DNA from: Lytechinus pictus
Lineage: Eukaryota
Direction of reading: 5' to 3'
Assembly: GCF_037042905.1 (NCBI RefSeq)
Contig: NC_087258.1
Coordinates: 27,032,001-27,096,000 of the forward strand
DNA length: 64,000 nt
The notes under the pieces: model-generated
The model's database searches: none
The model's input: only the letters and a program-made list of their open reading frames with translations
What the model was told of the DNA's origin: nothing
Part shown: positions 1 through 59,230 of the stretch, one piece after another
How the letters are laid out: each line of letters starts with the position of its first letter
Position numbering within the stretch: position 1 is the first letter of the stretch
Program-made: the position numbers and the translations under genes

Positions 1-1134
1 ATAATAATAAATGGAAACATAGTAATAAAAATAATTGTTACTAAGGAATGTATTGAGCATATTTGGGAGTACTCAATTTTGGGCTCAATTTTACCGGCTG
101 CTCTCATTGTGCCTATAATTCCTTCATTTTAACACAATCCATTTTTACAACATGGATAACAATGATCAGTGTTTGCTCAGGAATGAACGAAAATTCAAAC
201 ATTTGGTGTCACCTGATAGAGAGAACTTTAGAACACCAACCATTAAAAAAAAATTACTCATATTTAGAAATGTGATTTTGACACCTATTCTAAAATGTAT
301 TTTTTGAGCATATACAAATTAAATAAATCTTCAAAAATTTCAGGAGAGGAGGGCATCATAGAATTGAGCATATATTTATTATATTGAATCATTTATATCA
401 AGATTAAATATTCTCCCAATATCTTTACTACATAATTTTATGTTTTTATCCATTCCTATTATAACAACCTTTTGCCTAATAATTTTGACAATATTTTTCA
501 AACCAACAGATACATACATAGGTATAATACGAGAAATTCAGCCGATACTCGTACAATATATGGTCATTATTCTGTCTCAAACAATATATTTTTACATTTA
601 GGGGTGCCAGTATTCGGAATAAATTCCCTAAAAATACCAAACAATGCAAAACTCTACACAAAACCTTAAAAGACATTTGAAAATCAATTTGATGCAGAAG
701 GTATTGTTTAAATTACATTCATGTTATGTTTGCTTGTTCTGTATTTCCAGACTGCCTTTGTTTTTATTCTGTTGTTTTGTGATAATTTCAGGATCATTCA
801 TTTATAAGTTCTTTGTCACTTTTTGTGATCCTTCGACTATTCTTAAATATTCTTACTTATATTAAATGTATTTTATTTGAAATATTCATATTTCTTTATA
901 CGTATCTTTTTAAATGAAGATTGTGGTAAATGAAGTTTAATTTTTTTTAGTTTAAAGTGAATAATAGAATGTTACTGATATTTTGATATCATGTTCATAT
1001 TGGTGGAAAACAATTAATGTGACTTAGTGTGAACATTGTAATGAAAATGTACAAAGTTTATGTAAAGCAAAGTGATTTTATAATGTGATCTTCTTCGTAG
1101 GAGACAAAATATTATACTCTACATAACATAGATA

Positions 1135-12205: not shown

Positions 12206-12629
12206 CTTTATTTCGTAAAATTACGAGTTCATATTTAAAGATGGAACAAACTCAATTCAATTTAATTACATTTAGAATTTAATGAAATATTGATATCAAT
12301 AAAATCAATTCAAAATGATATATTGAAACATCGTAAGTATGCGATTTACATGGATACTAATCAATCATTTCGTTCGCTCTTAGATAGCAAGCTGTCTCAC
12401 CGTCTCTCCTCTCCTAAACTGACCATGAAATTAATTGTCTTTATGATATCACTTACTATGCAGTTTAGCTATTGTATTGGTAATATCCGATTTAAGTAAA
12501 TACAATTTTGATTTTACAGATATAAATAATTATTTCTGCATTATGGTTTGCTTTGATTTTATATATCAAAGTAATATCAAGATAATATAGAGTGTACAGA
12601 AATGAAGAATTACAAATGTGAATGTACGA

Positions 12630-19791: not shown

Positions 19792-20427
19792 CTTCCGTCG
19801 CAACTCTTGTTCAAAGTCAACCTGGTTCTTGATTTCATGAGCTTTATGACCAACAAGTACACACTTGTGACAGACTTGGACCTTACAATCCTCACAATAC
19901 ATATCCTTGTTCTCAAGTTTGTGGATGGAACACTTCTCGAATAAATGACCAATGCTGACCTTCCCTTCGATGACATCATCCATGGAGACAATCTCATGAT
20001 CTCCAAAGACTACTACAAGCTGTTGATGAGAATGCAGGCACTTATCACACATGTATAAAGTACATGTTCTGCATAATGACACGGCGTCTTTCTGAGACTT
20101 GCAAGCGGTACATTTCTGGCACATCTCAAGGACAGCATTCATCCCTCCACGCTTGGCGTGGTAATCGTCTACGCATCCGTTGATGGAGACATTGAGGCGG
20201 AGATCATCGACACGGTAGGCAGACAACTTGGTGATCTCCCTGCAGAGAGGACAGACCATGTGATCAAGGTCCTGGTGGGTAAGATCGTATTTCTTGAGGC
20301 ATCGCCTACAAAAAGTGTGTCCACATGAAGTTAAGATTGTCGCCTCGACAAATATATCAAGGCATAGCGGACATATCAGGTTCGGTGAAGAGCTTGAAGC
20401 TTTCTCTGATTCCCGCTTCTCAGCCAT
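19792..20427 (-). CDS. TRIM copy B exon 1 (RING-Bbox1-Bbox2)
   Basis: ATG at 20427, intact Zn ligands, donor AAG|gtaatt, 636 nt; intron 17784-19791. Confidence 0.92.
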
Positions 20428-27443: not shown

Positions 27444-27498
27444 GAGTTACCTCGAAATTTTCGGCTGCTAACTGCAACCTTCGTCAGCGATGTGACCC
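27444..27498 (-). ncRNA. Minimal type I hammerhead ribozyme in the PLE 3' pLTR, overlapping the ORF stop
   Basis: Minus strand: gggucacaucg-CUGACGA-aGGUUGC aguua GCAGCC-GAA-AAUU-U|cgagguaacuc. Stem I has 9 of 11 pairs, stem II has 6 bp, and stem III is the palindromic AAUU typical of PLE minimal hammerheads. Confidence 0.8.
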
Positions 27499-29939
27499 GA
27501 TTTGACCTTAGTGACGTAATGATCGATGATCGGGTCGTAGACATTCGGAAGCTTGTATCGCCCCCCGTCTCTGTTGAGAGAAGGTCTGAACGCCCGGATG
27601 TAGATGGCCTCTTTCACACCTCTCTCGAAGTACCGCGGCTCCCTGTCCAGCACTTGTACTTTGTTGATGTCAACACAATGGCCAGGGGATTCGATGTGGA
27701 TGTGCTGAGATACCTCGGAGGAAGTGGAGCTAGGGCGTCGGTGTTCAAGGAATCTTGTCCTAAGGGAACGTTCTGTTTCTCCTATATAAGATTCCTGACA
27801 TAGACCCTTAGTCGTCTGTCCTTGACAAGGAATCAAATAAATAGGACCGGTGATATCCTTCTTCTCTGTCTTATCTTTCGGCGCAACCAAGTACTGTCTA
27901 AGGGTCCTTGTTGGTTTGTAACACACCCTAATGCCAAATTGACTGAAATTCCTACGAAGGGCTTCCGATAATCCTTTAACGTACGGAAGTACAATCTGTC
28001 CTTTGGGTGGCTTGGGGTTGTCCTTTCTAGGCGGAGACTTTCCTTTAGCTGAGTTATCGATCTTGTTGAAGACCCAACTAGGATAGCCGCACTTGGAGAG
28101 AGCCTGTTTAACGTGTGCTTTTTCCTCAGAAACGGTGACTGGGTCTGTGATAACCGCTTCCGCTCGATGGAAAAGAGTCTTGATCACACCAAGCTTATGT
28201 TCAAGTGGGTGATTAGAGGAAAAGTTCAGGTATTGGTCGGTGTGCGTAGGTTTACGGTAAACTTTGATATCCAAGTTGCCGTCTGGTTGAATAACCGTCA
28301 AAGTGTCAAGAAATGCCAGCGACCGTCCTTCCTCACCTTCAGTGGTGAATTGAATGTCCGGATCAATCAAGTTCAGATGATCAGTAAATTCCTGCGAGAA
28401 TTCTTTCTTGAGTTTAGTGTGTGTATCATCAACATATCGAAACCACCATATTGGAGGATGAGGTGCTGACTCAAGAGCTAATTGTTCAAAATGTTCCATG
28501 TACAGATTACAAACAATGGGGGAAATTGGCGATCCCATCGCTGCTCCATGGATCTGCTGATAATATATGCCATTGTGAACAAAATAAGTACATCGCAGGC
28601 AAACATCCAACAGTTTCACAATGTGGTCCACTGATAGGCGAGTCCTATCTTTCCAAGTGTTCACGCTCTGAAGTTTGGATTGGATAATCTTCAGGGCCTT
28701 GTCAATAGGAACTGAAGTGAAAAGAGCTGTCACGTCATATGATCTCAGTTCCTCGTCTTCCTCAACACGCGCATTCTTAATACATTCAGCAAAAGATTGA
28801 GAATCAGTTACATGGTGACAAGTCTGACCAACTAAAGGTGACAAAATGTAGGCAAGATGCTTGGCACAGTTATAAGTAATTGATCCAATACTACTTACAA
28901 TCGGTCGAAGTGGAATGTTCGGTTTATGGATTTTAGGGAGACCATAAAACTTAGGAGGGGTATCTGTAGTTGGGTATAACCTGCGATATTCGTCTCTGTT
29001 GATACCACCGTCTCTCTCTATTTCTTGTAGAGCACTAACAAGTTCCTTCTTATACTTGCTTGTAGGATCCTTCGAACCAAGTTTCTTGTAAGTGTTGGTA
29101 TCATTCAAAAGAGATTCACATTTGCTATTATAATCACAAGTGTTCAGAATAACCACAGTCCTACCTTTGTCTGCTGGTAAAACTCTGATGTTCTTATCTT
29201 TCTTCAAATCGTTCAAAGCCTCAGTTTCTTCTTTGTTGAGATTGGGCTCGAGTTTTCTCGGTCGGCTCAGTAATCCAACGACTTTAGATCTCAACTCAGT
29301 AGCACTGCGTTCGTTCAACTTACGGCATGCGGTTTCCGTACTAGTGATGATGTCAACAACGGGAACCTCTGTAGGCGCTACGGAGAAATTAAGCCCTTTC
29401 ACTAACACCGACAATTCAGAATCTCTCAACAGACGATCAGAGCAGTTTTTCACCCATTTACCGATGCAATCTGACGCGATGTTTGTGTTAAAATTCCGAG
29501 AATTTTCCGCGTTTTTCTTCTCCAACAACCGAGCGAATTTGTTTTGCTGTCGTGTTTTGGAAGCCTCGTGTTCTTTGACCTGTGACCTCTCCACTCGCGT
29601 TTTCACTTCCGATATGACGTCACACGGCAATTCATTCGAAATGGCGGCATTCAAACGTTCCTTTTCACTGTTGAGAAAGTTGATCTTTCCAACTATTTGT
29701 CCAACACGTACATTTAATAAAGCTCTCTCTGCTTTGCGTAAGATGTTATCCGCTTTACCCCCCTTGACAGCGCTCGACAGTTGTAGACTCACAGGTGTGA
29801 CCCTGTTGTGTTTACAATGCAAGCTGAACCGAAGGTGGTTGCGATAACGAGCGATCTTCTGCCCAGTTCTTTCCAAATGTCTAATTCGATACAAGCAATC
29901 CTTGCCAAAATCATTACGAATACGATTATGAAAGTTCAT
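27468..29939 (-). CDS. Penelope-like element ORF: reverse transcriptase plus GIY-YIG endonuclease (823 aa, uninterrupted)
   Basis: PLE motifs KGLNF, ADKG..VV, FYGLPKIHK..PLRPIVS, SYDVTALFTSVP, GAAMGSPISP, RYVDDT, VYRKPTHTDQYL; C-terminal PIYLIPC...YIGETERSLRTRFLEH and KEAIYI..LNRD. Confidence 0.95.
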   Translation of the reverse strand: MNFHNRIRNDFGKDCLYRIRHLERTGQKIARYRNHLRFSLHCKHNRVTPVSLQLSSAVKGGKADNILRKAERALLNVRVGQIVGKINFLNSEKERLNAAISNELPCDVISEVKTRVERSQVKEHEASKTRQQNKFARLLEKKNAENSRNFNTNIASDCIGKWVKNCSDRLLRDSELSVLVKGLNFSVAPTEVPVVDIITSTETACRKLNERSATELRSKVVGLLSRPRKLEPNLNKEETEALNDLKKDKNIRVLPADKGRTVVILNTCDYNSKCESLLNDTNTYKKLGSKDPTSKYKKELVSALQEIERDGGINRDEYRRLYPTTDTPPKFYGLPKIHKPNIPLRPIVSSIGSITYNCAKHLAYILSPLVGQTCHHVTDSQSFAECIKNARVEEDEELRSYDVTALFTSVPIDKALKIIQSKLQSVNTWKDRTRLSVDHIVKLLDVCLRCTYFVHNGIYYQQIHGAAMGSPISPIVCNLYMEHFEQLALESAPHPPIWWFRYVDDTHTKLKKEFSQEFTDHLNLIDPDIQFTTEGEEGRSLAFLDTLTVIQPDGNLDIKVYRKPTHTDQYLNFSSNHPLEHKLGVIKTLFHRAEAVITDPVTVSEEKAHVKQALSKCGYPSWVFNKIDNSAKGKSPPRKDNPKPPKGQIVLPYVKGLSEALRRNFSQFGIRVCYKPTRTLRQYLVAPKDKTEKKDITGPIYLIPCQGQTTKGLCQESYIGETERSLRTRFLEHRRPSSTSSEVSQHIHIESPGHCVDINKVQVLDREPRYFERGVKEAIYIRAFRPSLNRDGGRYKLPNVYDPIIDHYVTKVKSGHIADEGCS

Positions 29940-30338: not shown

Positions 30339-31543
30339 AGTTATGACATTTTAAAGTTTCGCTTATTTTTCACAAAACAGTGATATGCACAACTCAGTTC
30401 CATGCAAATGAGTCAGTCGATGATATCCATCACTCACTATTTCTTTTGTTTTTTTATTGTTTGAATTATACAATATTTTATTTTTTTACAGATATGACCA
30501 TATTAGGGACCGACTTGACTGAATCATATAGTATTAAGCAATGCTAATATCACATGTTCAGGGAGGAATTGATCGCTGTTTCACTTGACATAGAGGAGAA
30601 AATTAGAATATTTCCTATTTCATATAATAAAATACAAAAGAAATAGTGAGTGGATGACGCCATCAAGTCTCCTCATTTGCATACCAACCACGATGTGCAT
30701 ATAACTGTTTTGTGAAATTAAGCGAAAATTTAAAATGTCATAACTTTCTTATTTTACATCCGATTTTGATGAAGTTTTCAGTGTTATGCTCATTGGATTT
30801 CTCTCTTTTTAATCAAAAAAAATTTCGTTGGGGTGGACTTGTCCTTTAATAACAAGAACGCTGAATACCTTCAACATTCGACACACATTGCTTATGATTT
30901 TGCACCACTGCCAGTCATGATGAATCCAAATATAATGTATTCAGGGTCATATTTTCTTATAGTTACATTCAGAGACTTTTCAGTTTGTTTCATCCCTGGC
31001 CCTCTTTAAATGGCTTTAAAAAGGTCAACTTTGATGAAAGTATGTTTTCGTGAAATTTGAACCCAAAGCCCTGAAGCACGTTTGAAACAAACAGTTCAAG
31101 AACTAACTGCATTCGCAAAGGTCCAGTAAATGGGCGACACTTAACTAAATTCTACACAATTATGCATACATAATAAGGTTCACATCAAAGTTAGATCGAA
31201 ACCATCATAATCTGTATGCACATTGCAACATGCATAAAGCATGCTTTAGCTTTGTTTGACCCACGACCGACCGATCAAACATAACATATTTGGGCTGTCG
31301 AACAGGCCCAGGTCTGTGAAACATACTGTAGTTTTTCATCCATTTTTTCTTTCTTCTTCTGGAGCTTCTCGCGGCCCACTTGGGAGAGCTTCGCGGCCCA
31401 CCAGTGCCAGTGAGCCGCGGCCCACCGTTTGTGAAGCGCTGCTCTAAAATCTATGTCATCTGCAGAAAAGGTGTAAATTAATTCCTAGGAAATATATGCA
31501 TAATCAACTTTTAATGGTGCATGCAACCGTGAATGAATGTTAT

Positions 31544-33407
31544 GTTAGTGCCTTACATTAGTTAGTGCCTTACATAAAGGCGGTGCAAATGAACCTTCTA
31601 ATTTCAGGCCAATTTCGATATTACCTATTTTATCTAAGCTACTAGAACGTATAGTGTTTGATCAATTGTATGAATACTTGAACAGGAACAATTTGATTAA
31701 TGACTACCAATCTGGCTTTCGGCCATTACATTCTACAGCAACGGCATTACTCAATACAACAGATGAATGGCTAAAAAGCTTTGATGAAGGCAAATTAGTA
31801 TGCTCTGTCATGCTAGACTTAAAAAAAGCATTCGACACGGTTGATTTCGAATTGCTTATCCAAAAATTAAAGCAATATGGAATTGGGGATCACTCAATTG
31901 AATGGTTTACAAGTTACTTATATGGAAGATGCCAGAAAACGACAGTGCATGGTATATCATCTGATTTATTACCCATTAAATCTGGAATCCCTCAAGGGTC
32001 CATTTTAGGGCCGCTTCTTTTCATTTTACATATTAATGATCTACCTTTAGTTCTTAGAAATTGCAAAATAAGTATGTATGCAGATGACACTATTTTATAT
32101 TATGCAAGTAACAACTACTCTGATCTAGAAAACAAAATCAATGAAGATTTGCAAAATGTGAAACGATGGCTTGATCACAATAAGCTTAGTTTGAATATCA
32201 AAAAAACTGAATATATTGTCCTAGGAACTAGAAATCGACTGAAACTATTCAAATATGAATCGCTAAATATTCACATTGATGGAACCCCCCTAACAAGAGT
32301 TACCCAGTGTAAACATTTAGGAGTAATTTTAGATGAAAATCTGTCATGGGGAAAACACATTCAAAATGTGCAGAAGAAATGTAGTAGCGGTTTGTTTATG
32401 CTAAAATCGATACGAAGTATGGTTGACAAGGATACAATGATTCTAGTCTATAACGCCCTGATTTCATCTCATTTGTCATATTGTGATATAGTATGGGGAA
32501 ATTGCGGCAAATGTTTAAAAGATAACCTCCAAAAGATTCAAAATCGGGCAGCTCGCGTTATCAATAATACCGCCTGGGATTCATCCGGAAACGAAAATCT
32601 AAATGAACTAAATTGGGATACACTTGAAAAGAAAAGGAATGAAAGTGTTGCAATAATGATGTTTAACATACTCAATAACTTAGCCCCTTCATATCTAATC
32701 AATAGATTTTCCCTTAAAGAAAGATCACATAACACAAGAAGTGGGAATCTCAATTTGGAAATAATGCAAATAAAGTCTGAATCTGCAAAGCGCATGTTTA
32801 TGTACAGAGGCGCCAGTATGTGGAACTCATTACCCACTAATATTCAAGCGGCACAAACGAAACACAATTTCAAAACAGGTCTAAAGAGATTATCTGTGTG
32901 ATATGGATCACAATGACTATTTTTCTGGTTAATTTTCTGTCCCCAGTACATGTATTATTTTCCAACCATTTCATATGTTTTGCTTTTATATGGCATGAGT
33001 ATTAACTATATAAGTTTTATAATTAATTTCAGTGCATGTTTAGTTATGTTTAGTTATCATAAATTTTCCAGACATTTTTGTATGTTTAGTTTTTATCATT
33101 GATAAATCATGACTTATATTCATTTTCTTGTACTTGTTTGTCCATTATAGAAACATGTATTTACTTTGACATTTTACTTTACCATGTACACATTTAATAT
33201 TACCATGTATGCACCGCTTTGTTCCAATTTACCGATAGATATTTCATGTTGTAAATTATTGATGTTTTTGAAAACGGTATATAATTTCTTCGTCTTTTTC
33301 TTACTATCATTATTATTATTTTTCTTCTTCTTCTTTTCTTCTTCTGTTATCTTCTCTGTTGTCTTTTCTCTTTTTCGTCTCCCTCTCACTTTTCCCTTCT
33401 TCTTCTT

Positions 33408-36332: not shown

Positions 36333-37697
36333 TTACAGTGATACCTTGATGAAATATAACTTATCGAAACATGCAAAGGCGAGCATGTATGGGGAGAGGG
36401 AGACCAAGTAACACCACTCCCAACCCAATGTCATATCAAGTGCTTTGAACTCAACTCTTTCCTTCAGGTTCAGACCATCAAGATCATAGAGCCTGATCAC
36501 CACCTTCCTATTCTGCCAATCAACACTCGCTACATACACCCTGTCCTGCTCATCCACGGCAGCATACAGGTAGACATCCTTTGGAGTTTGTAGAGACTCA
36601 CCAGCATTCCCATCCCTGCCATAGACCGTCACCACGCTTGGATTGCCCCAACATGAACTCGTGACGATCAAACCCGTCCTGGTGGTAGATGCCTGATCCG
36701 CCTTGTGTTTTGTTTGAACAGTGTGTTTAAGAGTGGATCCTGTCGGGTCATAGATATATACTTGGTTTCCATAGTTAGTAATGATGATTTCATCTGATGG
36801 ACTTCTGTTAAGTCTGAGATTATTAGTATTGTCTCCCACATGGATTGTTGCCTTCCTGGAGCCAAGGGGGGAGTATATGTAGGCTTCTTTAGTACCGTGA
36901 AGCGATACGCATAAAGATCCATCTTGTTGACAGACAAGATCATAATATTCCCCGTCATTGGGTATGTTACTATACTGCTGCTTACCACCATTTGAATCAA
37001 TGATTTCAATACCATGTGCAAACCTCCCATATACGATACCCACACTGTTATGTGAGTACCGTGTCATTCCCAACATAATTGACCGTAGATTAACGCACTG
37101 AATGACTTCCATCTTGGGGTCTGATCCTGAGATGCTCCCGAGGTCAAGACGAGTATCATTTGCTGGCTTGAACCTCTTCTCCTGTGATTTCTTCTTTATG
37201 GCTGCCGTAGATGGATGATCTGTATATTCTGAGATGCTCCCGAGGTCAAGACGAGTATCATCTGCTGGTTTGAACCTCTTCCCCTTTGCTTTCTTTGTAA
37301 TTGCTGACGCAGAAGTGTGATCGGTAGCCTCCTTCAGCATGGCTTCTAGTTCCTCACAGAGCAAGATATGAGCAGATAGAGTGTCTGTCTCAAGATGACC
37401 CAGTCTGTCATTATCTACCAAAGTAATTGAACTACAAATACTCTTGATCCTCTGACGATCTTTTGACTTCAAGACATTGAGGTCGTCATCAAAACTATGC
37501 TTTAAGGCATTTATTTGGTCGTTGAGATTTCGAAGATTTTCTTCCAGCTCCTCGGCCTTGATGGTGTAGGCTTGCTTGACATCATCTAGTAGTGTCTGCA
37601 CTGCAGTGTGTACCTCATTACGTTGTATTTCTATGTTTTGAATGTTCTTTTCCAGCTCTGTTTTCTTGTCAGCAGAGCGTTGGTCAAGGTCTTCCAC
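36333..37697 (-). CDS. TRIM exon 2 copy C: intact frame but no adjacent exon 1 of its own; could be spliced to exon 1 at 44107-44742
   Basis: 454-aa open frame with intact acceptor. Its upstream intron sequence (37698-40650) ends by fusing to the middle of another exon 2 instead of reaching an exon 1. Confidence 0.7.
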   Translation of the reverse strand: MEDLDQRSADKKTELEKNIQNIEIQRNEVHTAVQTLLDDVKQAYTIKAEELEENLRNLNDQINALKHSFDDDLNVLKSKDRQRIKSICSSITLVDNDRLGHLETDTLSAHILLCEELEAMLKEATDHTSASAITKKAKGKRFKPADDTRLDLGSISEYTDHPSTAAIKKKSQEKRFKPANDTRLDLGSISGSDPKMEVIQCVNLRSIMLGMTRYSHNSVGIVYGRFAHGIEIIDSNGGKQQYSNIPNDGEYYDLVCQQDGSLCVSLHGTKEAYIYSPLGSRKATIHVGDNTNNLRLNRSPSDEIIITNYGNQVYIYDPTGSTLKHTVQTKHKADQASTTRTGLIVTSSCWGNPSVVTVYGRDGNAGESLQTPKDVYLYAAVDEQDRVYVASVDWQNRKVVIRLYDLDGLNLKERVEFKALDMTLGWEWCYLVSLSPYMLAFACFDKLYFIKVSL

Positions 37698-37988
37698 CTA
37701 AGGAATGAAAGTTTGAAAAGTAAAAACAATGATTTAGATCTGCAAATATTCCTCTAATTTAAAAATAACAAACTATTTAAAAAGATAACTACTGCAGAAT
37801 GACACGCGATAATCAGTAAAAGAAACCCCATATTTACACAATTTCATGTCATTGTTACAATAACTTTAAAGAAAATCGTGGCTGACATTGAACAAAATAA
37901 TAGGAAGAAATGCATTATATGCAACAATATTAACAATATTGATGATGGTACGTTAAATAAGCTTATTATCAGATACAATACATTTTTG

Positions 37989-38330
37989 GATGTTGTTTGA
38001 AGGTTTGCATGGTGGTATGTACAATCGCTGATGTGGCTTACGGTACACCATGTGAAGTGTTATAGAAACAGTGGATAGAAGAAGAGAAGGAATGGATAGG
38101 CGAGAAAGTCGAGATTTGAGAGCAGAGTATTCTTTCTTGAAAGTAGTCCTGAAAAGGATTGTAAACCAGGAAAGATTGATGAGTAGTAGAGCTAGTGAGG
38201 AGATGCTGGCTTGAGCCGGCGAGTAGAGATGATGAGTAGTAGAGAGACTCGACGTTTCGGGCAGGTTGACTGTCCGTCTTCTGAAGACGGACAGTCAACC
38301 TGCCCGAAACGTCGATAACGACGATAACGA
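37989..38330. mobile_element. Remnant pLTR of a second Penelope-like family in the copy C intron, with terminal fold-back and hammerhead core
   Basis: Absent from paralogous introns. 33-bp inverted repeat at 38249-38315 containing CUGAAGA-cGGACAG ucaac CUGCCC-GAA-ACGU-C (plus strand 38281-38313). Confidence 0.7.
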
Positions 38331-38699
38331 ATAACGAATTTATTACATTTCAAAATTTCAACACAATTACAAAGGAGAGCGAATTGTAATATAACGTAAT
38401 GAAATGAAATGGAAACCTTCTGAAAAGCACAGCTCGTTAATGAAGGTTTTTTTTTCAATAAATAAGACATATTGATACAAGATACAAAGTTCAAAATCTA
38501 TCTAATACACAAATCATCATATCTTTCTAGTAGAAATTAAACATAAATCCTTGTTAATTATTATTTTTTTATCATATTCTCCTATAGCAAGTAAAATATA
38601 AACAAGGCTGAATAATCATAATAATATTACAAGAAAGTGAAAAAGGACACACGAAACAAAACATTACAAGAACAGGAAATACAGGTAAAAGAACGGTAC

Positions 38700-39760
38700 G
38701 TCTCGGCCCCTTATTGTTTATGTACACAAGTAGACTTCTTTACGGTATAACAAGAGAGTTTCCAAGTATCACTTCCCACTGCTATGCAGACGACACACAA
38801 CTATACTTATCTTTCTCCCCAAATGCACCACGAGATGATAAATCATTAGAAGATTGTGTGGCATATATTAAAACCTGGATGCTTCAAAATAAGTTAATGT
38901 TGAATGATAGAAAAACTGATTTTTTAGTCATTGGTACCCCACGTCCGGTTTCTAAATTTGGGGGCTATAGCTTAACTGTTGGCTTTTCGGTTATACATAT
39001 AACTCCATCAGATAAAGCCAGAAACCTTGGTGTAGTCTTTGATACCCACTTAAGAATGGAATCAAAAATCAACAATGTTTGTAAATCCGCTTATTTTATG
39101 ATCTATAACTTGAGACGTATCCGTAATTTTTTTTATCAAGACACCATGAAAACTATTGTTCTCGCTTGTATCACAAGTAAATTGGATTATTGTAATAGTG
39201 TTCTCTATGAATTACCCGATTCTCAAATAAGCAAACTGCAGAGAGTGCAAAACACATGTGCACGTTTGATATGTCGTCTTCCCAAATTCTCTCCTGTCAC
39301 CCCATTATTGAGAGAATTACACTGGCTACCTGTCCGGCAAAGAATCACATAGATCCTAATGATAGTCTTTAAAGGTCTTAATGGTCAGGCCCCAAGTTAT
39401 ATCTCAGATCTCTTGAAATTGAAATCCCGATCTCATGACCATGCATCACCTATACGTAGCTCACAAGATACACTCACACTGCAAGTACCCCCACACAAGA
39501 CTAAAGCAACACTAGGAGGTCATTTCTGATAGGTCATTTCTGATGTAGGTCATAGGTCATTTCTGATGTCAGCCCCACGACTATGGAACAAACTTCCCCT
39601 CAACATTAGGAATTCAACAAATTTACATAAGTTCAAGTTAAAATTAAAGACCTATATATTCCAATTGTATGTACAGCACCTAGGAAGCTCCTGCAGCGCA
39701 ATAGAATATATATAAATAGTTGTTGCGCTATATAAATGCATATTATTATATTATTATTAT
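38700..39760 (+). mobile_element. 5'-truncated L2-type LINE in the copy C intron (antisense to TRIM)
   Basis: YADDTQLYLSF, RNLGVVFD, LDYCNSVL, LHWLPVRQRI then stop; (tat)n tail; inserted at gaacggtac|aagaac, which is uninterrupted in paralogous introns. Confidence 0.88.
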
Positions 39761-40650
39761 TACAAGAACAAAGCATGGCAAAGACTATACAAGACCAAGA
39801 CATAAAAGAAACTATACAAGAACTGACAGAATTTAACAAAAACAGTAAAACAAATGACAAAAAAAAAAACGAGTAAGAGAAAGCAAACAAAAACAAAGCT
39901 GCACGGGTAGATAGAATGAAGAGACAGAGAGGGGAAAAGAAGTGAAATAAAGGGAGGGTGAAGGGAGAGAGTGGGGGAGAAAAAGAAAGAATAGAAGATC
40001 CTCAAAATATCCTAATAATACTGAATAATAGGGGTGTTGTGATTATCAATGGGATTTTGTTTTATGCTACGAATTGTAGGCTTATTTTGTAAAGCTTGTG
40101 AAAGTGAGTTCCAAGGTTTCATGCCAGAAGATATGAATTGTTTGTTTGTATATAATGTCCTTATTCTAGGTAAATGGAAAAGTCCAGCAGCTCATGTAGG
40201 GTGGTGATGAATGTTAAATTTTTCTTGAAAACAAAGAGTACAAGTTTTAATATATTTATCAATACGATTTCCAAGTGTTTTGATTTGTTTTTCTATCTTT
40301 TAATTTCGTAAATATTATTATCTTTATTATCATCACTTATTGTGTTGATTACCGTTACATTTCAAATTAACATTTCTATATTTAATACCATTACATGTAG
40401 GTATATTAACGGTCACATCCATCCCAAAAAATTATGATTGATTTGAATAAATAGAGAAATTCAAACTAGTATCACACTGAAAATTTTATCAAAATCGGAT
40501 GTAAAATGAGAAAGTTATGACATTTTAAAATTTCGCGTATTTTTCACAAAACAGTGATATGCACAACTCAGTGACATGCAAATGAGAGAGTCGATGATGT
40601 CCCTCACTCGCTATTTCTTTTGTTGTTTTTTATTGTTTGAATTGTTCAAT

Positions 40651-41676
40651 ACCCGTCCTGGTGGTAGATGCCTGATCCGCCTTGTGTTTTGTTTGAACAG
40701 TGTGTTTAAGAGTGGATCCTGTCGGGTCATAGATATATACTTGGTTTCCATAGTTAGTAATGATGATTTCATCTGATGGACTTCTGTTAAGTCTGAGATT
40801 ATTAGTATTGTCTCCCACATGGATTGTTGCCTTCCTGGAGCCAAGGGGGGAGTATATGTAGGCTTCTTTAGTACCGTGAAGCGATACGCATAAAGATCCA
40901 TCTTGTTGACAGACAAGATCATAATATTCCCTGTCATTGGGTATGTTACTATACTGCTGCTTACTACCATTTGAATCAATGATATCAATACCTTGTGCAT
41001 ACCACCCATATACGATACCCACACTGTTATGTGAGTGCCGTGTCATTCCCAACATATATGACCGTAGATTAACGCACTGAATGACTTCCATCTTGGGATC
41101 TGATCCTGAGATGCTCCCGAGGTCAAGACGAGTATCATTTGCTGGCTTGAACCTCTTCTCCTGTGATTTCTTCTTTATGGCTGCCGTAGATGGATGATCA
41201 GTATATTATGCGATGCTCCCGAGGTCGAGACGAGTATTATCAGCTGGCTTGAACCTCTTCCCCTTTGATTTCTTCGTAATTGCTGACGCAGAAGTGTGAT
41301 CGGTAGCCTCCTTCAGCATATCATCTAGTTCCTCACAGAGCAAGATATGAGCAGATAGAGTGTCTGTCTCAAGATGACCTAGTCTGTCATTATCTACCAA
41401 TGTTATTGAACTACAAATACTCTTGATCCTCTGACGATCTTTTGACTTCAAGACGTTGAGGTCGTCATCAAAACTATGCTTTAAGGCATTTATTTGGTCG
41501 GTGAGATTTCGAAGATTTTCTTCCAGCTCCTTGGCCTTGATGGTGTAAGCCTGCCTGACATCATCTAGTAGTGTCTGCACTGCAGTGTGTACCTCATGAC
41601 GTTGTATTTCTATGTTCTGAATGTTCTTTTCCAGCTCTGTTTTCTTGTCAGCACAGCGCTGGGCAAGGTCTTCCAC
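40651..41676 (-). pseudogene. TRIM exon 2 copy D: premature stop (GAA>TAA at 41206-41208) and 3' truncation at about 40651
   Basis: Reads ...DLGSIA*YTDHPST versus DLGSISEYTDHPST in copy C. Homology ends after ASTTRTG, where intron sequence (attgttcaat) is joined. Confidence 0.85.
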
Positions 41677-43737
41677 CTAAGGAATGAAAGTTTGAAAAGT
41701 AAAAACAACGATTTAGATCTGCAAATATTCCTTAACTGTGAAAATATAAATTATTTAAAAAGATAACTACTGCAGACTAACATGCGATAATCAGTAAAAG
41801 AACCCCATACTTACATAATGTCATGTCATTGTTACAATAACTATAAAGAAAATAGTTTATGACATTAAAAAAAAAATTAGGAAGAAATTATATACAACAA
41901 TATTGATGATGGCGCGTTGAATAAGCTAATTATCATATTCAATATATTTTTATTGATTGATTTGATTGATTGATAACGGATTTATTTCATTTTAAGATTT
42001 CATCAAAATTTAGAGCGAATTGTAATACATTGAATTAAAATTAAATGGAAACATGAAAAGCAAGCTCGTTAATGAAGGTTTCCTTCAATAAATAAGACAT
42101 ATTGATACAAGATTTTAAAAAAATCCTAATACATATAATATACAAACATTTTTGTATAAATTAGATATAAATCCTTAAAAATTATTAGTTTATTATCATA
42201 TTCTCCCGAGTAAAGACAAACAAGGCTGAATATTACAAGATATGACAAAAAAATGAAAGGGACACACGAAATAAAACGTTACGAAAACAGCAAATAATAG
42301 AACGGTACAAGAACAAGGCATGACAAAAAAACTATACAAGAGCAATACATGACAAAAACTTTACAACAGACAAAATATAACAAAAACCATAAAAAAGGAC
42401 AAAAAACGAGAAAAGAAAGGAAAAAAAGGTGCACAGATAGATAAAATGAAAAGAGATAGAGACGGGAAAAGAAGTGAAATAAAGGGAGGAAAGAGAGAGA
42501 GAGAGAGGGTGGGAAAGAATAAGAAAGAATAGAAGATCCTCAAATTTGTTAAAATATCCTAAGAATACTAAATAATAGGGGTGTTGTGATTATCAATGGG
42601 ATTTTGTTTTATGCTATGAATTGTAGGCTTATTTTGTAAAGCTTGTGAAAGTGAGTTCCAAGGTTTCATGCCAGAAGATATGAATTGTTTGTTTATATAT
42701 AATGTCCTTACTCTAGGTAAATGGAAAAGTCCAGCAGATCATGTAGGGTGGTTATGAATGTTAAATTTTTTTTTTAAACAAAGAGTACAAGTTTTAATAT
42801 ATTTATCAATACGATTTCCAAGTGTTTTGATTTGTTTTTCTATCTTTTAATTTCGTCAATATTATTATCTTTATTATCATCACTTATTGTGTTGATTACC
42901 CTTACATTTCAAATTAACATTTCTATATTTAATACCATTACATGTAGGTATATTAACGGTCACGTCCATCCCCCAAAAATATGATTGATTAGAATAAATA
43001 GAGAAATTCAAACTAGTATCACACTGAAAATTTCATCAAAATCGGATGTAAAATGAGAAAGTTATGACATTTTAAAATTTCGCGTATTTTTCACAAAACA
43101 GTGATATGCACAACTCAGTGACATGCAAATGAGAGAGTCGATGATGTCCCTCACTCGCTATTTCTTTTGTTGTTTTTTATTGTTTGAATTGTACAATATT
43201 TCATATCTTACAGATTTGACAATAAGGATCCCCTGACTGAGCCAAATAGTATTAAAATAATGCTTATTCTACATGGCCGGGAGGAATTATACAAGATAAA
43301 AAAAAAAAAAGTGAACATGGCGAATGGATGATGTATCGGTCTCCTCATTTGCATACCGACCAGGATATGCATAATAACTGTTTTGTGAAATTAACCGAAA
43401 TTTAAAATGTCAGAACTTTCTTATTTATATCCGATTTCGATGAGATTTCCATTGTTATGCTTGTTGGATTTTTCTCGTTTTGTTCAAATCAACTTGATAG
43501 GTCCATGGTTGGGGGAACTTGTCCTTAAATATTGTTTATGTTATTTACGTACAGTCATGATCACTCCTATTCCTCTCAAAGCCATTTTCAGCTCTTTTCG
43601 TTATCATCATCAATATTCAATTTTAGTGTTCTTTTATAGGTGAGGATCCATGGGAGTCAAACTTCAGGTGCCGCCTTGACCCCCATCCTTCCTCCCCCTC
43701 CTCCTCCACTCCCCTTTCCCTACCCCTCACCGAGATG

Positions 43738-43992
43738 CACTCTTAAAAAATATTAGGTAAAAATGCTCCACGAGGGTAATTATATGTCCAACCAACATTG
43801 CGCATTTCTTTTGAGGATTTTTATTTATACAGTGTAATTAAAAATTGTGCCCATTCTTAAGTAATTGCTGCTTATTTTTTCAACCTTACTGGACAATATG
43901 CTTCCCGCATTGGGTAAAGTACTGCCCCAAATTGGTTGGAAACATACTTACCATCGTGCTGGTTAAAACCTTACCCAATATTTGTTTACAGT
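43738..43992. mobile_element. Small CACT-type MITE in the copy D intron
   Basis: cactcttaaaaaatattaggtaa ... ttacccaatatttgtttacagt; absent from the A, B and E introns. Confidence 0.6.
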
Positions 43993-44106
43993 TTGTTTAT
44001 TCTTATCATTTATTTTTTTCATCATCGACATCAATATTATTATCAGTGTCAATATTCAATTCAGAGTTCTTTTCCACACTATGATCTATTAAATTAATAA
44101 AATTAC

Positions 44107-44742
44107 CTTCCGTCGCAACTCCTGTTCAAAGTCAACCTGGTTCTTGATTTCATGAGCTTTATGACCAACAAGTACACACTTGTGACAGACGTGGACCTTA
44201 CAATCCTCACAAAACATATCCTTGTTCTCTGGTTTGTGGACGGAGCACTTCTCGAATAAATCACCAATGCTGACCTTTCCTTCGATGACATCATCCATGG
44301 AGACAATCTCATGACCGTCAAACAACGTGGTAAGATGTTGATGGCAATGTAAGCACTCATCACACATATAACAATTACATGTTCTGCAGAATGACACGGC
44401 GTCTTTCTGAGACTTGCAAGCGGTGCATTTCTGGCACATCCCGAGGACAGCATTCATCCCTCCACACTTGGCGTGGTAATCGTCTACGCATCCGTTGATG
44501 GAGATATTGAGGCGGAGATCATCGACACGGTTGGGGGACAACTTGATGATCTCCCTGCAGAGAGGACAGACCATGTGATCAAGGTCCTGGTGGGTTAGAT
44601 CGTATTTATTGAGGCATCGCCTACAAAATGTGTGTCCACATGAAGTCAGGATTGTCGCCTCGACAAATATATCTAGACATAATGGACATATCAGGTTCGG
44701 TGAAGAGCTTGAAGCTTTCTCTGATTCACGCTTCTCAGCCAT
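44107..44742 (-). CDS. TRIM copy D exon 1 (RING-Bbox1-Bbox2)
   Basis: Intact ATG, Zn ligands and AAG|gtaatt donor; 636 nt. Confidence 0.88.
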
Positions 44743-46660
44743 CGCTAAATGAATTTAAAACACGAGACCTAAATTCCAACGAATATAAAGCATATGTATA
44801 TCAGTATTGATGCATTGAAACGTCAAGTTCGGGTTAGAACGCAGTGATACAACTGGCTTCAAGCTATTGCTGCTGTGTACTTCAATACAAATTCAACTAC
44901 AATGGTAAAAACACACCCAATTCGAACTTCCTATAAGAAGTACCGGGTATTCCCAGATACCTTTGAACTTGATCGCGTTATGTATTTATTCATCATGTTC
45001 ATTGATTTGTGCTTTTTACACAAATGAGTGCATTGATTACTCCTGTCAAGTTACCTTGAACAATACCATTCCATGAACAATTTCAAGCACTTCAAATTGG
45101 GGAACTTATTTTCGGTTGTGTTTATATTCAATTTAATTCTTTATTCCATTTCCATTCAAAACATAATACAAAGTAATATAAAGTAATACAAATCAAATTC
45201 AATTTTACAGACGAGTATTCTCACTTCGTAAAACAAAAACAAAAAGCAGTATATTATTTAGCATAAATGGAAATGAGGGGGGTCCACTAAAAAGCAAAGC
45301 TTGTAAAGTGTGGATCCCCCTTGGAAATGAAAAAAATATAATCGACTTGTTCATATATGCGTTTATATACAGGAAAGAAAAAAGAGAAGGAACAAAAAGG
45401 TCGAAATCATATTGATGTAAACATGATTACAGAACAAAGTGCAAAGCTATTCACACAAAGAGGTCTTCGCTGTGAAGGATGTGCTGCGCAATAGACAGAA
45501 GAAAAAGCAGAAAGAGAGGGAATATGTGTGTGTGCGTGTGTGTGTGAGGGTGTGTATGTGTGTGTGATTAATGATTTTAAACTAAAAAAGTTTGAAATGT
45601 TCAATAATTCATTCTATCACTCAGCATTTACCAATACACATGCTTAAACAGAGAATACGTCTTGCGTTCTGATCCATGCAGGTATCATTCTCTGTTTTGC
45701 TCTTATTCAGCTAAGTTTATTTGAGTATCCGCCCTCTCACACGGTAAAAAATATCGTAATTTGAATGATGATTCAAGAGAAAAATAAGGCTAGTGACGAA
45801 TTTTTAGCATGTGTGAAACCAAACTAAAATCCCGAACGTTAATCGCAATTAGGAATTAAAATTCTACCCCGGAGGTGAATTCCAGTCAAGTTTCACTCAA
45901 ATTACGGTACGAATTTTACGTGTGAAAGGCTTGTCCTCCAAAAATGTTTTTGGGGCGGAGCTTATAATGTTTCCTATCAAGCACTTCAATAGAAAACACA
46001 CATTATTGTCATCACTGATCTGAATAATGTTCAGATAAGTGATTGTCATGCACTTATCGTATCGATGCAGTGCTTTGATTGACAAGTCACCGATGACACA
46101 TACCGCCTTCTCTATAGGGAATTCGATTCATATAACAGTTTTCGAGTGAGCGTGTGAAAGGTCCAATGATTTTAAAGACAAATTGCAATCATACAGTGAT
46201 AATTCAAGATTCATGTGTTGAAAAATTTGAAAATTATACAGAATAAAATGATTATATTCATTAATTGTTCTGGTCCCAGAATCCACGTTGGCTACCGAAC
46301 TCTCTGTAGCAGATCAAAACAGCTCATTTTGCACCACGTGCATAAAAAATCATCACAGTAGATCGTAACAATATATTGGACCAAACTTTAATCTAGTTAC
46401 CGAATTACATAACACTATCATTCAAGAAATAGCCATTTCAACTTCTGCTTCATGATGCAGAAGGCGCCGCTAGACAAAAAAAAAAGGAAAAGAAGAAGAA
46501 AGTGAGAGAACAGGAGAAAGACCAATATAAAAGAGAAAGACAAAGTTAGTAACGTAAGATAAAGTAGAAAATATTTCGAAAACCTGTGCCACCGACCAAA
46601 ACTTACAGTGGGTCCCGCTTAATTCTAACATTGATATTGGACAGAAGGGGGGATTTTCTG

Positions 46661-54597: not shown

Positions 54598-55860
54598 TTA
54601 CAGTGATACCTTGATGAAATATAACTTCATCCAACAAGCAAAGGCGAGCATGTCTGGGGAGAGGGAGACCAAGTAACACCAATGCCAACCCAATGTCATA
54701 TTAAGTGCTTTGAACTCAACTTTTTTCTTCAGGTTCAGACCATCAAGATCATAGAGCCTGATCACCACCTTCCTATTCTGCCAATCAACACTCGCTACAT
54801 ACACCCTGTCCTGCTCATCCACGGCAGCATACAGGTGGACATCCTTTGGAGCTTGTAGAGACTCACCAGCATTCCCATCCCTGTCATAGACCGTCACCAC
54901 GCGAGGATCGGCGTGACATGAACTCGTGACGTACAAACCCGTCCTGGTGGTAGATGCCTGATCCGCCTTGTGATTTGTTTGAACAGTGTGTTTAAGAGTG
55001 GATCCTGTCGGGTCATAGATATATACTTGGTTGTCACCGTTAGTAATGATGATTTCATCTGATTGACTTCTGTTAACACTGAGATCATTAGTACCGTCTC
55101 TCACGTGGATTGTTGCTTTCCTGGAGCCAAGGGGGGAGTATATATAGGCTTCTTTAGTATGGTATAGCGATACGCATAAAGATCCGTCTTGTTGATAGAC
55201 AAGATCCTTATATTTCCTGTCATTGGGTATGTTACTATACTGCTGCTTACCACCATTTGAATCAATGATATCAATACAATGTGCAATCCACCCATATACG
55301 ATACCCACACTGTCGTGTGAGTACCGTGTCATTCCGGACATATATGACCGTAGATTTACACACTGAATGACTTTTATCTTGGGGTCTGATCCTGAGATGC
55401 TCCCGAGGTCAAGACGAGTATCATCAGCTGGGTTGAACCTCTTCCCCTTTGATTTCTTCGTAATTGCTGACGCAGAAGTGTGATCGGTAGCCTCCTTCAG
55501 CATATCATCGAGTTCCTCACAGAGCAAGATATGAGCAGATAGAGTGTCTGTCTCAAGATGACCTAGTCTGTCATTATCTACCAATGTTATTGAACTACAA
55601 ATACTCTTGATCCTCTGACGATCTTTTGACTTCAAGACGTTGAGGTCGTCATCAAAACTATGCTTTAAGGCATTTATTTGGTCGGTGAGATTTCGAAGAT
55701 TTTCTTCCAGCTCCTTGGCCTTGATGGTGTAAGCCTGCCTGACATCATCTAGTAGTGTCTGCACTGCAGTGTGTACCTCATGACGTTGTATTTCTATGTT
55801 TTGAATGTTCTTTTCCAGCTCTGTTTTCTTGTCAGCACATCGTTGGGCAAGGTCTTCCAC
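54598..55860 (-). CDS. TRIM copy E exon 2 (single linker repeat); full protein 632 aa
   Basis: 420-aa open frame; lacks one 102-nt linker repeat relative to A/B/C; same acceptor. Confidence 0.9.
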   Translation of the reverse strand: MEDLAQRCADKKTELEKNIQNIEIQRHEVHTAVQTLLDDVRQAYTIKAKELEENLRNLTDQINALKHSFDDDLNVLKSKDRQRIKSICSSITLVDNDRLGHLETDTLSAHILLCEELDDMLKEATDHTSASAITKKSKGKRFNPADDTRLDLGSISGSDPKIKVIQCVNLRSYMSGMTRYSHDSVGIVYGWIAHCIDIIDSNGGKQQYSNIPNDRKYKDLVYQQDGSLCVSLYHTKEAYIYSPLGSRKATIHVRDGTNDLSVNRSQSDEIIITNGDNQVYIYDPTGSTLKHTVQTNHKADQASTTRTGLYVTSSCHADPRVVTVYDRDGNAGESLQAPKDVHLYAAVDEQDRVYVASVDWQNRKVVIRLYDLDGLNLKKKVEFKALNMTLGWHWCYLVSLSPDMLAFACWMKLYFIKVSL

Positions 55861-58594: not shown

Positions 58595-59230
58595 CTTCCG
58601 TCGCAACTCTTGTTCAAAGTCAACCTGGTTCTTGATTTCATGAGCTTTATGACCAACAAGTACGCACTTGTGACAGACTTGGACCTTACAATCCTCACAA
58701 AACATATCCTTGTTCTCAAGTTTGTGGATGGAACACTTCTCGAATAAATGACCAATGCTGACCTTCCCTTCGATGACATCATCCATGGATACAATCTCAT
58801 GATCTCCAAAGACTACTACAAGCTGTTGATGAGAATGCAGGCACTTATCACACATGTATAAAGTACATGTTCTGCAGAATGACACGGCGTCTTTCTGAGA
58901 CTTGCAAGCGGTACATTTCTGGCACATCTCAAGGACAGCATTCATCCCTCCACGCTTGGCGTGGTAATCGTCTACGCATCCGTTGATGGAGACATTGAGG
59001 CGGAGATCATCGACACGATTGGCAGACAACTTGGTGATCTCCCTGCAGAGAGGACAGACCATGTGATCAAGGTCCTGGTGGGTTAGATCGTATTTCTTGA
59101 GGCATCGCCTACAAAATGTGTGTCCACATGAAGTCAGGATTGTTGCCTCAACAAATATATCAAGACATAATGGACATATCAGGTTCGGTGAAGAGCTTGA
59201 TGCTTTCTCTGATTCACGCTTCTCAGCCAT
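58595..59230 (-). CDS. TRIM copy E exon 1 (RING-Bbox1-Bbox2)
   Basis: Intact ATG, Zn ligands and donor; 636 nt; intron 55861-58594. Confidence 0.92.

What the first reader, a model, noticed from the sequence alone, without database searches (positions are those of the whole stretch)
36333..44742. One exon 1 with two alternative exon 2s: possible full-length versus propeller-less (RBCC-only) isoform switch
Seen: the order is exon 1 (44107-44742), intron, exon 2D (stop at 41206, cut at about 40651), the distal part of the intron again, then intact exon 2C. The junction attgttcaat|acccgtcc joins intron sequence (equivalent to about 43197) to mid-exon 2. This fits an intragenic tandem duplication or a deletion between two genes. 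Both acceptors are intact and phase 0. Splicing to 2D gives a 368-aa RING-B-B-coiled-coil protein ending exactly before the recognition domain; skipping to 2C (6.4-kb intron) gives 666 aa. Known: TRIM5 isoforms lacking the C-terminal domain act as dominant negatives through coiled-coil dimerisation. Caveat: 2C has changes at otherwise invariant sites (DLDQRS, YGRDG, SPYML) and TE insertions in its intron, so the locus may simply be decaying.
Basis: partly seen in the sequence, partly recalled or inferred. Interest (0 to 1): 0.7.

Follow-up and report, generated by a model that had tools for sequence, protein, structure and literature searches.

The report
Sea-urchin TRIM gene with duplicated last exon
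One gene in a sea-urchin array of TRIM-type ubiquitin ligases carries an extra, cut-off and stop-bearing copy of its last exon inside its intron; this could yield a short ligase without its target-binding propeller, but no RNA evidence shows that it does, so it looks like an ordinary rearrangement by-product.

Summary
The described anatomy is real in the assembly (Lytechinus pictus, GCA_037042905.1). On the minus strand lie exon 1 (44107-44742: RING and B-boxes), an intron, a truncated exon 2D (41676 down to 40651, with a single TAA at 41208-41206), a second copy of the distal intron with a reverse-transcriptase insertion, and an intact exon 2C (37697-36333). The two acceptors are identical from -32 to +12. 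The join at 40651 is non-homologous, with 1 nt of microhomology.

Folding shows that exon 2 encodes a long helix, a disordered linker and a six-bladed NHL-like propeller. The 2D stop lies in the linker, and 2D ends after about 3.5 blades.

RefSeq models only exon 1 + 2C (XP_063965558.1, 666 aa). One raw RNA run has no reads on these exons. Contigs from three other runs carry paralogue letters at two sites where gene C differs from its window neighbours. One spliced contig fits exon 1 joined to 2D but is not locus-specific. The isoform switch is therefore untested.

2C shows no excess decay. 2D is a gene-conversion mosaic, partly like gene E and partly like 2C. A neighbouring array gene has a 99.3%-identical 2.1-kb intron duplication, so such events recur here.

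The scan had already noted TRIM arrays and propeller-less TRIM genes elsewhere in this genome.

The parts
44107..44742 (-). Exon 1: ATG, RING finger, B-box region, 212 codons, donor AAG|gtaatt in phase 0
   Evidence: ORF and donor. Pfam zf-RING_UBOX 3.7e-09 and zf-B_box 9.6e-08. Identical to residues 1-212 of XP_063965558.1.
41677..44106 (-). Intron between exon 1 and exon 2D (2,430 nt). Its part 41677-43198 belongs to the D-side copy of the duplicated unit. A high-copy repeat lies at about 42985-43290.
   Evidence: Self-BLAST. Very high read depth at 42860-43259.
41206..41676 (-). Exon 2D, open part: acceptor ccttag|GTG at 41676, 156 codons (coiled-coil helix plus start of the linker), TAA at 41208-41206
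   Evidence: AlphaFold model: helix 2-139, residues 140-156 disordered. The stretch 41251-41650 is 0.5% from gene E and 4% from 2C.
40651..41205 (-). Exon 2D remainder after the stop. It is in frame with no further stop and covers the second linker repeat and propeller residues up to exon-2 codon 342 (about 3.5 of 6 blades).
   Evidence: Strand map of the propeller model. 40651-40931 is identical to 36672-36952.
40650..40652 (.). Non-homologous join of the intron (equivalent to 43198) to mid-exon 2 (equivalent to 36672), with 1 nt of microhomology
   Evidence: Base-by-base comparison. BLAST end points.
40629..40634 (-). AATAAA hexamer 17 nt past the join, inherited from the intron (the same motif lies at the equivalent place in the parent intron, about 43176-43181). 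A possible but unproven poly(A) signal for an exon 1-2D transcript.
   Evidence: Motif scan.
37698..40650 (-). C-side copy of the intron (acceptor-proximal, middle and distal parts up to the equivalent of 43198). Together with the 2D region it makes the 6,409-nt intron of the RefSeq model.
38700..39760 (+). Retroelement fragment (reverse-transcriptase C-terminal part) inserted in the C-side intron copy, antisense to the gene
   Evidence: Gap in the alignment to the introns of A, E and the D side. Pfam RVT_1 2.6e-05, below Pfam's gathering score.
36333..37697 (-). Exon 2C: intact terminal exon of 454 codons (coiled coil, two 34-aa linker repeats, six-bladed NHL-like propeller)
   Evidence: Identical to residues 213-666 of XP_063965558.1. 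Propeller model pLDDT 93, best PDB matches are the NHL domains of Thin, TRIM2 and Brat.

Best explanation
This is a rearranged member of a tandem array of two-exon TRIM-like genes (RING, B-boxes, coiled coil, NHL-like propeller) in the sea urchin Lytechinus pictus.

A non-homologous join placed a second, incomplete copy of the terminal exon, together with part of the intron, between exon 1 and the intact terminal exon. The join has 1 nt of microhomology, as in end joining or replication template switching. It arose either as an intragenic tandem duplication or as a deletion that fused two neighbouring array genes.

The extra exon (2D) is a gene fragment. It lacks the last 2.5 propeller blades and its own 3' end, and it carries one nonsense codon in the linker. 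It looks fresh because gene conversion from gene E-like and 2C-like donors keeps overwriting it.

Shown: the anatomy, the fold, the mosaic pattern, and that RefSeq models only exon 1 + 2C.

Inferred: if the gene is transcribed, the nearer acceptor (2D) competes on equal terms with 2C. The rearrangement would then lower full-length output and give a 368-aa RING-B-box-coiled-coil by-product from a last-exon stop, which would not be an exon-junction NMD target. I read this as a structural accident of a fast-changing array, not an evolved, regulated switch.
For: - Anatomy and join.
- Array of four further exon pairs on the same strand.
- Species and RefSeq model.
- Mosaic: 2D at 41251-41650 is 0.5% from gene E and 4% from 2C. 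40651-40931 is identical to 2C. The mid-intron copies differ by 21-22%, while the C-side copy is 7-13% from A and E.
- Recurrence: a 2.1-kb, 99.3%-identical tandem duplication lies in the intron of the neighbouring LOC129275617.
- Fold: propeller pLDDT 93, NHL matches at TM 0.72-0.77. Helix 2-139 followed by a disordered tail where the stop lies.
- The acceptors differ by one base at -33.
- 2C is not decaying: 9 deviations at 325 conserved columns, and 20 of 114 relatives have as many or more. Its private changes are 9 non-synonymous to 3 synonymous, against 13:5 for B and 8:2 for E.
Against: - No locus-specific transcript was seen, so neither use of 2D nor use of 2C is shown.
- The claim that the nearer acceptor competes rests on general splicing kinetics. 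2D lacks its native 3' end, which could weaken terminal-exon definition and favour 2C.
- The near-identity of both copies right at the join (281 identical nt on one side, 1 mismatch in 164 nt on the other) is not explained by this account.
- The join itself is not confirmed by independent reads.
Confidence: 0.55

Rival explanations
1. Evolved isoform switch. Exon 1 is spliced either to 2D, giving a 368-aa propeller-less protein that dimerises through the coiled coil with full-length paralogues and damps or redirects them, or to 2C, giving the 666-aa ligase. The choice is regulated.
For: - Two equal phase-0 acceptors.
- The stop sits in the disordered linker after the complete predicted helix, so the short product keeps a whole RBCC module.
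- Annotated RBCC-only relatives of 359-371 aa that end in the same linker exist in three sea urchins.
- A truncated TRIM5alpha is reported as dominant negative (PMC3304089).
- A 128-nt contig in run X19 joins 44105/7 to 41674/6. No differences were reported at the sites that separate 2D from 2C, A, B and E.
Against: - No annotated short product exists for this gene.
- A raw RNA run shows zero depth.
- At 44608 and 44674 every contig in three runs carries the paralogue letter, so the spliced contig may come from another of the dozens of paralogues.
- 2D keeps 185 useless in-frame codons after the stop and ends at a random join, as expected of a fragment rather than a shaped exon.
- A single nonsense change is what chance decay gives.
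Confidence: 0.12
2. Silent or dying locus. The rearrangement, perhaps a deletion that removed one gene's 3' half and the next gene's promoter and exon 1, left a unit that is not transcribed. The RefSeq model is a homology-driven prediction.
For: - No locus-specific RNA in four runs.
- No transcript assembly encodes the exact 666-aa product.
- Mid-intron copies are 21-22% apart, as between different genes, which fits a two-gene fusion.
- Gene C has somewhat more changes at conserved sites than the family median, 9 against 4.
Against: - Exon 1, both acceptors and 2C are all intact, with no frameshift or stop in 666 codons.
- The change load is within the family range, and the non-synonymous to synonymous ratio is like that of the neighbours.
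- The sampled RNA may simply be the wrong tissue. In S. purpuratus, TRIM45-like and TRIM71-like genes are induced in coelomocytes after UVB (PMC13043383).
Confidence: 0.2
3. Assembly artefact. The extra copy is a falsely duplicated haplotype or paralogue, and the true locus has one exon 2.
For: - The join is not confirmed by any independent read here.
- The two copies are nearly identical only next to the join and very different in the middle, an odd pattern.
- Sea-urchin genomes are highly heterozygous (my own knowledge).
Against: - The join is non-homologous, with 1 nt shared and no N run. An overlap- or graph-based assembler does not produce such a join without reads that carry it (inference).
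- A second kb-scale tandem duplication in a neighbouring gene argues for a real mutational process.
- The D-side mid-intron is 16-22% from every other copy in the window, so it is a distinct sequence that must lie somewhere.
Confidence: 0.1

Closest known systems
Truncated TRIM5 forms lacking a complete PRYSPRY domain (for example the human R332X allele; the short splice forms are from my own knowledge)
   Same: The RING, B-box and coiled coil are kept and the C-terminal recognition domain is lost. The product comes from the same promoter as the full-length form. A dominant-negative effect is reported for the truncated allele (PMC3304089).
   Different: In TRIM5 the short forms come from normal exons or a point mutation. 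Here the short form would come from a duplicated, cut-off terminal exon. The recognition domain is a propeller, not SPRY. No expression or interaction has been shown.
TRIMCyp of owl monkey and macaques (cited in the reference list of PMC3304089; the mechanism is from my own knowledge)
   Same: A structural mutation places a new terminal coding segment with its own acceptor inside a TRIM gene, so that the original recognition exon is skipped or competes.
   Different: TRIMCyp gains a new binding domain by retrotransposition. Here nothing is gained: the new exon is a broken copy of the old one.
Stand-alone RBCC-only TRIM paralogues of sea urchins (P0125 L. pictus 362 aa, P0128 and P0141 S. purpuratus, P0143 L. 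variegatus; earlier scan note s1-329234)
   Same: They share the same N-terminal architecture, and they end in the same linker after the coiled coil, aligning to residues 1-355..372 of the 666-aa protein.
   Different: They are separate genes, 49-88% identical, some with tails of their own. The 2D product would be an allele-specific by-product that shares exon 1 with a full-length form.
TRIM-NHL proteins (TRIM2, TRIM3, TRIM71/Lin41, Brat, Thin)
   Same: RBCC followed by a six-bladed propeller. The best structural matches have TM 0.72-0.77.
   Different: Only 13-17% identity, and no Pfam NHL repeat hit. There is no filamin domain. A two-copy 34-aa linker repeat stands in its place. The family is a large lineage-specific tandem array.

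Membership tests
TRIM / RBCC proteins | N-terminal RING finger | tested here: met
   Pfam zf-RING_UBOX 3.7e-09 and zf-C3HC4 9.8e-08 on exon 1, residues 19-62.
TRIM / RBCC proteins | B-box zinc finger(s) after the RING | tested here: met
   Pfam zf-B_box 9.6e-08, two stretches, the best at residues 165-200.
TRIM / RBCC proteins | Coiled coil after the B-box | tested here: met
   AlphaFold model of the first 156 residues of exon 2D: one helix over residues 2-139, pLDDT above 90 for residues 1-80. Dimerisation was not tested.
TRIM-NHL subfamily | NHL repeats recognisable by sequence (Pfam NHL) | tested here: not met
   No NHL hit at E <= 0.1 on exon 2C.
TRIM-NHL subfamily | Six-bladed beta-propeller of the NHL type at the C-terminus | tested here: met
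   Model pLDDT 93.1, pTM 0.90, 23 strands. The top PDB matches are the NHL domains of Thin, TRIM2 and Brat, E 5e-11 to 3e-10, TM 0.72-0.77.
Alternative terminal-exon isoform pair | Two usable acceptors downstream of one donor | tested here: met
   Identical acceptor sequences at 41676 and 37697, same phase.
Alternative terminal-exon isoform pair | Transcripts that use each acceptor from this locus | tested here: inconclusive
   Raw RNA run X22 has zero depth on the exons. Contigs of X1, X12 and X19 carry paralogue letters at 44608 and 44674. One spliced contig is compatible with exon 1 joined to 2D but is not locus-specific.
Alternative terminal-exon isoform pair | A functional poly(A) site for the proximal terminal exon | tested here: inconclusive
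   An AATAAA lies at 40634, 17 nt past the join, and is also present in the parent intron. No 3'-end reads were seen.
Gene fragment / pseudo-exon from partial duplication | Truncated relative to intact copies and carrying a disabling change | tested here: met
   It ends at codon 342 of 454 and has a TAA at codon 157, where the paralogues have GAA or GAT.

The most novel reading that the evidence does not exclude
The locus is a snapshot of how propeller-less TRIM genes are born. A partial duplication of the terminal exon plus one nonsense change in the linker turns a full-length array member into a producer of a 368-aa RBCC-only protein. That product ends where the established RBCC-only sea-urchin paralogues end, still shares exon 1 with a full-length product, and could act on the array's ligases through coiled-coil pairing.
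Probability: 0.15. Interest if true: 0.55.

Novelty: new member of a known kind. Interest (0 to 1): 0.3.

Why it matters
If the short form is made, this would be a natural case in which a structural mutation, not evolved splicing signals, creates a recognition-domain-less partner for a diversified family of candidate immune ligases. It would also suggest a route to the stand-alone propeller-less TRIM genes seen in sea urchins. As the evidence stands, it mainly documents how fast these arrays are reshuffled by partial duplications, gene conversion and retroelement insertions. It also warns that the RefSeq 666-aa model skips an equally good, nearer acceptor.

Tried and rejected
- Reads. The older runs are kept as 50-200-nt contigs, so the 40651 join could not be bridged. 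Because reads are laid on this stretch alone, paralogues of 97% identity or more cross-map, and depth on the exons is therefore not evidence for this gene. The 6,000-letter limit kept the exon 1 donor and the 2C acceptor out of one call, so use of 2C was not tested at all.\n- Exact-ORF look-up. A look-up of the ORF that spans the join (40633-41091) found nothing in public assemblies. This is uninformative, because gene callers may choose other starts.\n- Conversion donor. I searched for a donor of the divergent D-side mid-intron in two further array loci (L002, L003). Only about 85% identity was found.\n- Decay of 2C. I tested and rejected this idea.\n- Donor sites. A crude scan between the 2D stop and the 2C acceptor found no strong consensus donor, so I did not pursue a three-exon transcript.\n- Literature. 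A search on the L. pictus assembly method gave nothing usable.\n- Joined product. I did not build, search or fold the joined exon 1 + 2D product.
Full report
**What the window is**

The window holds a tandem array of two-exon genes, all on the minus strand.
- Gene A: exon 1 at 7405-8037, exon 2 at 3325-4686.
- Gene B: exon 1 at 19792-20427, exon 2 at 16419-17783.
- The locus in question: exon 1 at 44107-44742.
- Gene E: exon 1 at 58595-59230, exon 2 at 54598-55860.

A word-based protein search gives 80-100% identical Lytechinus pictus proteins named TRIM45-, TRIM71- or TRIM36-like. It also finds many relatives in L. variegatus and Strongylocentrotus purpuratus. Genes B and E equal XP_063965655.1 and XP_054768103.2 exactly. 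The window lies on CM073239.1 of GCA_037042905.1, where record coordinate = window coordinate + 27,032,000.

**Check of the observation**

- Exon 1 is 212 codons, from the ATG at 44742 to the donor AAG|gtaatt at 44107/44106.
- The same acceptor, ccttag|GTGGAAGACC, stands at 41676 and at 37697. The two flanks differ by one base at -33.
- From 41676 the frame is open for 156 codons, up to the TAA at 41208-41206. That is the only stop in the 342 codons down to 40651. The paralogues have GAA or GAT there.
- At 40651 homology to exon 2 ends. The sequence continues as a copy of the intron, equivalent to 43198, with a single shared A at the join.
- The unit 40651-43198 matches 36672-40651. The second copy is interrupted at about 38700-39760 by a reverse-transcriptase fragment on the other strand.
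- Exon 2C (36333-37697) is open for 454 codons.

**What the exons encode**

- Exon 1 carries a RING finger and B-box(es).
- Exon 2 has no significant Pfam hit, so I folded two parts of it with family alignments.
- The first 156 residues (the 2D reading) give one long helix over residues 2-139, followed by a disordered tail.
- The last 262 residues of the 2C product give a confident model (pLDDT 93, pTM 0.90) of 23 strands.
- The best matches of that model among solved structures are the NHL propellers of Thin, TRIM2, Brat, TRIM3 and Lin41, at TM 0.72-0.77 and 13-17% identity.
- Between helix and propeller lie two copies of a 34-residue repeat. Gene E has one copy.
- The 2D stop falls in the first repeat, 17 residues after the helix and about 38 codons before the first propeller strand.
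- The join cuts the propeller after model residue 150, about 3.5 of 6 blades.

A product of exon 1 plus 2D would be a complete RING-B-box-coiled-coil module with a short floppy tail.

**What annotation says**

- XP_063965558.1 (LOC129275627, 666 aa) is exactly exon 1 plus exon 2C.
- The gene call spans 36333-44742, and nothing else is called on 2D.
- The name carries no isoform label.
- A search restricted to proteins of 117-371 aa finds no product of exon 1 plus 2D.
- That search does show annotated RBCC-only relatives of 359-371 aa in all three urchins. They align to residues 1-355..372 of the 666-aa protein, so they end in the same linker. An earlier scan note (s1-329234) describes such a cluster elsewhere in this genome.

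**RNA and DNA reads**

No run holds more than 18% of the sampled words of the locus. I laid four runs on 38860-44850 at 97% likeness.
- Raw RNA run X22 (about 12.9 million records read) has no depth on exon 1 and essentially none on 2D. Its reads lie only on repeats.
- Contigs of X12 and X19 cover the exons but not the unique intron, so they behave as RNA. X1 covers both.
- At 44608 (A; its three window neighbours have C) and 44674 (T; neighbours have A), every contig covering the site carries the paralogue letter: X1, X12 and X19 at 44608, X1 and X12 at 44674. The exon coverage is therefore cross-mapping from relatives.
- One 128-nt X19 contig joins 44155-44105 to 41674-41598, which is the predicted exon 1 to exon 2 splice. 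It has three differences, none reported at the sites that separate 2D from 2C, A, B and E, or exon 1 from that of A, B and E.
- That contig is compatible with a true exon 1-2D transcript. However, the same run shows no contig with this gene's letter at 44608, and dozens of paralogues lie outside the window. I do not count it as locus-specific.
- None of the pieces or joints listed spans 40651 (most pieces were not shown). Use of the 2C acceptor could not be examined, because donor and 2C acceptor do not fit into one 6,000-letter call.

**History of the rearrangement**

The two unit copies are not plain sisters.

| D-side stretch | Comparison | Difference |
|---|---|---|
| 40651-40931 | vs 2C | identical |
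| 40851-41650 | vs C-side copy | 3.5-5% |
| 41251-41650 | vs gene E | 0.5% |
| 41851-42450 (mid-intron) | vs C-side copy | 21-22% |
| 42651-43050 | vs C-side copy | 3.5-4% |
| 43051-43198 | vs C-side copy | 0.7% |

In the mid-intron the C-side copy is 7-13% from A and E, while the D-side copy is 16-22% from all four other copies.

This patchwork is what frequent gene conversion in an array produces. It explains why a fragment with no function still has only one stop. It also leaves both origins open: a tandem duplication whose interior was later overwritten, or a deletion that fused an upstream gene D (exon 1, intron, 5' part of exon 2) to the intron and exon 2 of a downstream gene C. The mid-intron divergence favours the second origin. 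The near-identity on both sides of the join favours a recent event. I could not resolve this, and it is logged as unexplained.

Two further array loci were fetched. Neither holds a donor for the D-side mid-intron. One of them, LOC129275617, carries a 2.1-kb tandem duplication inside its intron at 99.3% identity. Kb-scale intragenic duplication is therefore a recurrent, ongoing process here, which also argues against an isolated assembly error.

**Is 2C decaying?**

- Against 114 full-length relatives, the 666-aa protein deviates at 9 of 325 columns that are at least 95% conserved. The family median is 4, and 20 of 114 members have as many or more.
- Among the five exon-2 copies in the window, the private codon changes (non-synonymous:synonymous) are 9:3 for 2C, 13:5 for B, 8:2 for E and 18:10 for A.
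- The RING and B-box cysteines and histidines are in place (reading of the sequence).

There is no special sign of decay.

**How it most likely works**

Shown: one donor, two equal acceptors, a nearer terminal exon that stops in the linker, and a farther intact one.

Inferred:
- With equal acceptor and branch-site sequences, the nearer site should be used at least part of the time.
- The stop would then lie in the last exon and escape junction-dependent decay.
- An AATAAA 17 nt past the join could end the transcript.
- The outcome would be less full-length ligase and some RBCC-only protein.

Whether that protein does anything is open. Truncated TRIM5alpha can act as a dominant negative (PMC3304089), and RBCC-only paralogues exist, so a function is conceivable. 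But nothing in the sequence marks 2D as shaped for it: it keeps 185 in-frame codons of broken propeller after the stop and ends at an arbitrary join.

In S. purpuratus, TRIM45-, TRIM71- and TRIM33-like genes are induced in coelomocytes after UVB (PMC13043383). Those cells are where one should look for expression.

**Verdict**

- My best reading is a rearrangement by-product in a fast-evolving TRIM-NHL-like array (0.55).
- The rivals are a silent locus (0.2), a true switch (0.12) and an assembly artefact (0.1).
- It is a new member of a known kind and of modest interest.

Noticed in passing
L002:10830-15029 (CM073239.1, about 32 kb beyond exon 1 of this gene, outside the window): The neighbouring array gene LOC129275617 (XP_063965851.1) has a 2.1-kb tandem duplication wholly inside its intron: 10830-12931 against 12930-15029, 99.3% identical. 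Genes A, B, E and the P0124 gene have no intragenic direct repeat of 150 nt or more.
   Followed up: partly
window 40504-40931 with 43051-43198 and 36672-36952: The two copies of the duplicated unit are nearly identical only next to the join: 281 identical nt on the exon side and 1 mismatch in 164 nt on the intron side. In the middle of the unit they are 21-22% apart. No simple history explains why both identical tracts abut the join.
   Followed up: partly
window 37124-37326, 41103-41305; gene E 54598-55860: A 102-nt (34-residue) tandem repeat in the linker between coiled coil and propeller is present twice in A, B, 2C and 2D but once in gene E (420 against 453-454 codons). This is copy-number variation of a disordered linker within the array.
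   Followed up: no
window 3325-4686 and 7405-8037 (gene A): Both exons of gene A are open (453 and 211 codons, with the same donor). No protein identical to them turned up: the closest cluster representatives are 91.6% (exon 2) and 96.7% (exon 1), and the two of those clusters that I checked (P0010, P0009) have one member each. Gene A may be unannotated or called a pseudogene.
   Followed up: partly
window 27468-29939 (-) and 31654-32901 (+): Two retroelement ORFs lie in the long spacer between genes B and C. One is an uninterrupted 823-aa ORF called as a gene in the record (DUF8422, weak RVT_1, HTH_animal). The other is a 415-aa reverse-transcriptase ORF (RVT_1 4.8e-30).
   Followed up: partly
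window 42985-43290 and 40438-40651; also 30339-30851, 6628-7031, 19300-19419: A high-copy repeat, with depth in the tens of thousands in all four runs, sits in the intron of every array gene. The intron breakpoint (43198) lies inside it, not at its end.
   Followed up: no
window 5972-6628 and 57145-57824: The introns of genes A and E carry about 650-680 nt that B and both copies at the C/D locus lack. This is a shared indel that groups B, C and D against A and E in that part of the intron.
   Followed up: no
P0121 (XP_063965257.1, 214 aa, same chromosome, outside the window): An annotated L. pictus protein that is an exon-1-only read-through product (RING and B-boxes, ending just past the donor position) clusters with the full-length family.
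   Followed up: no
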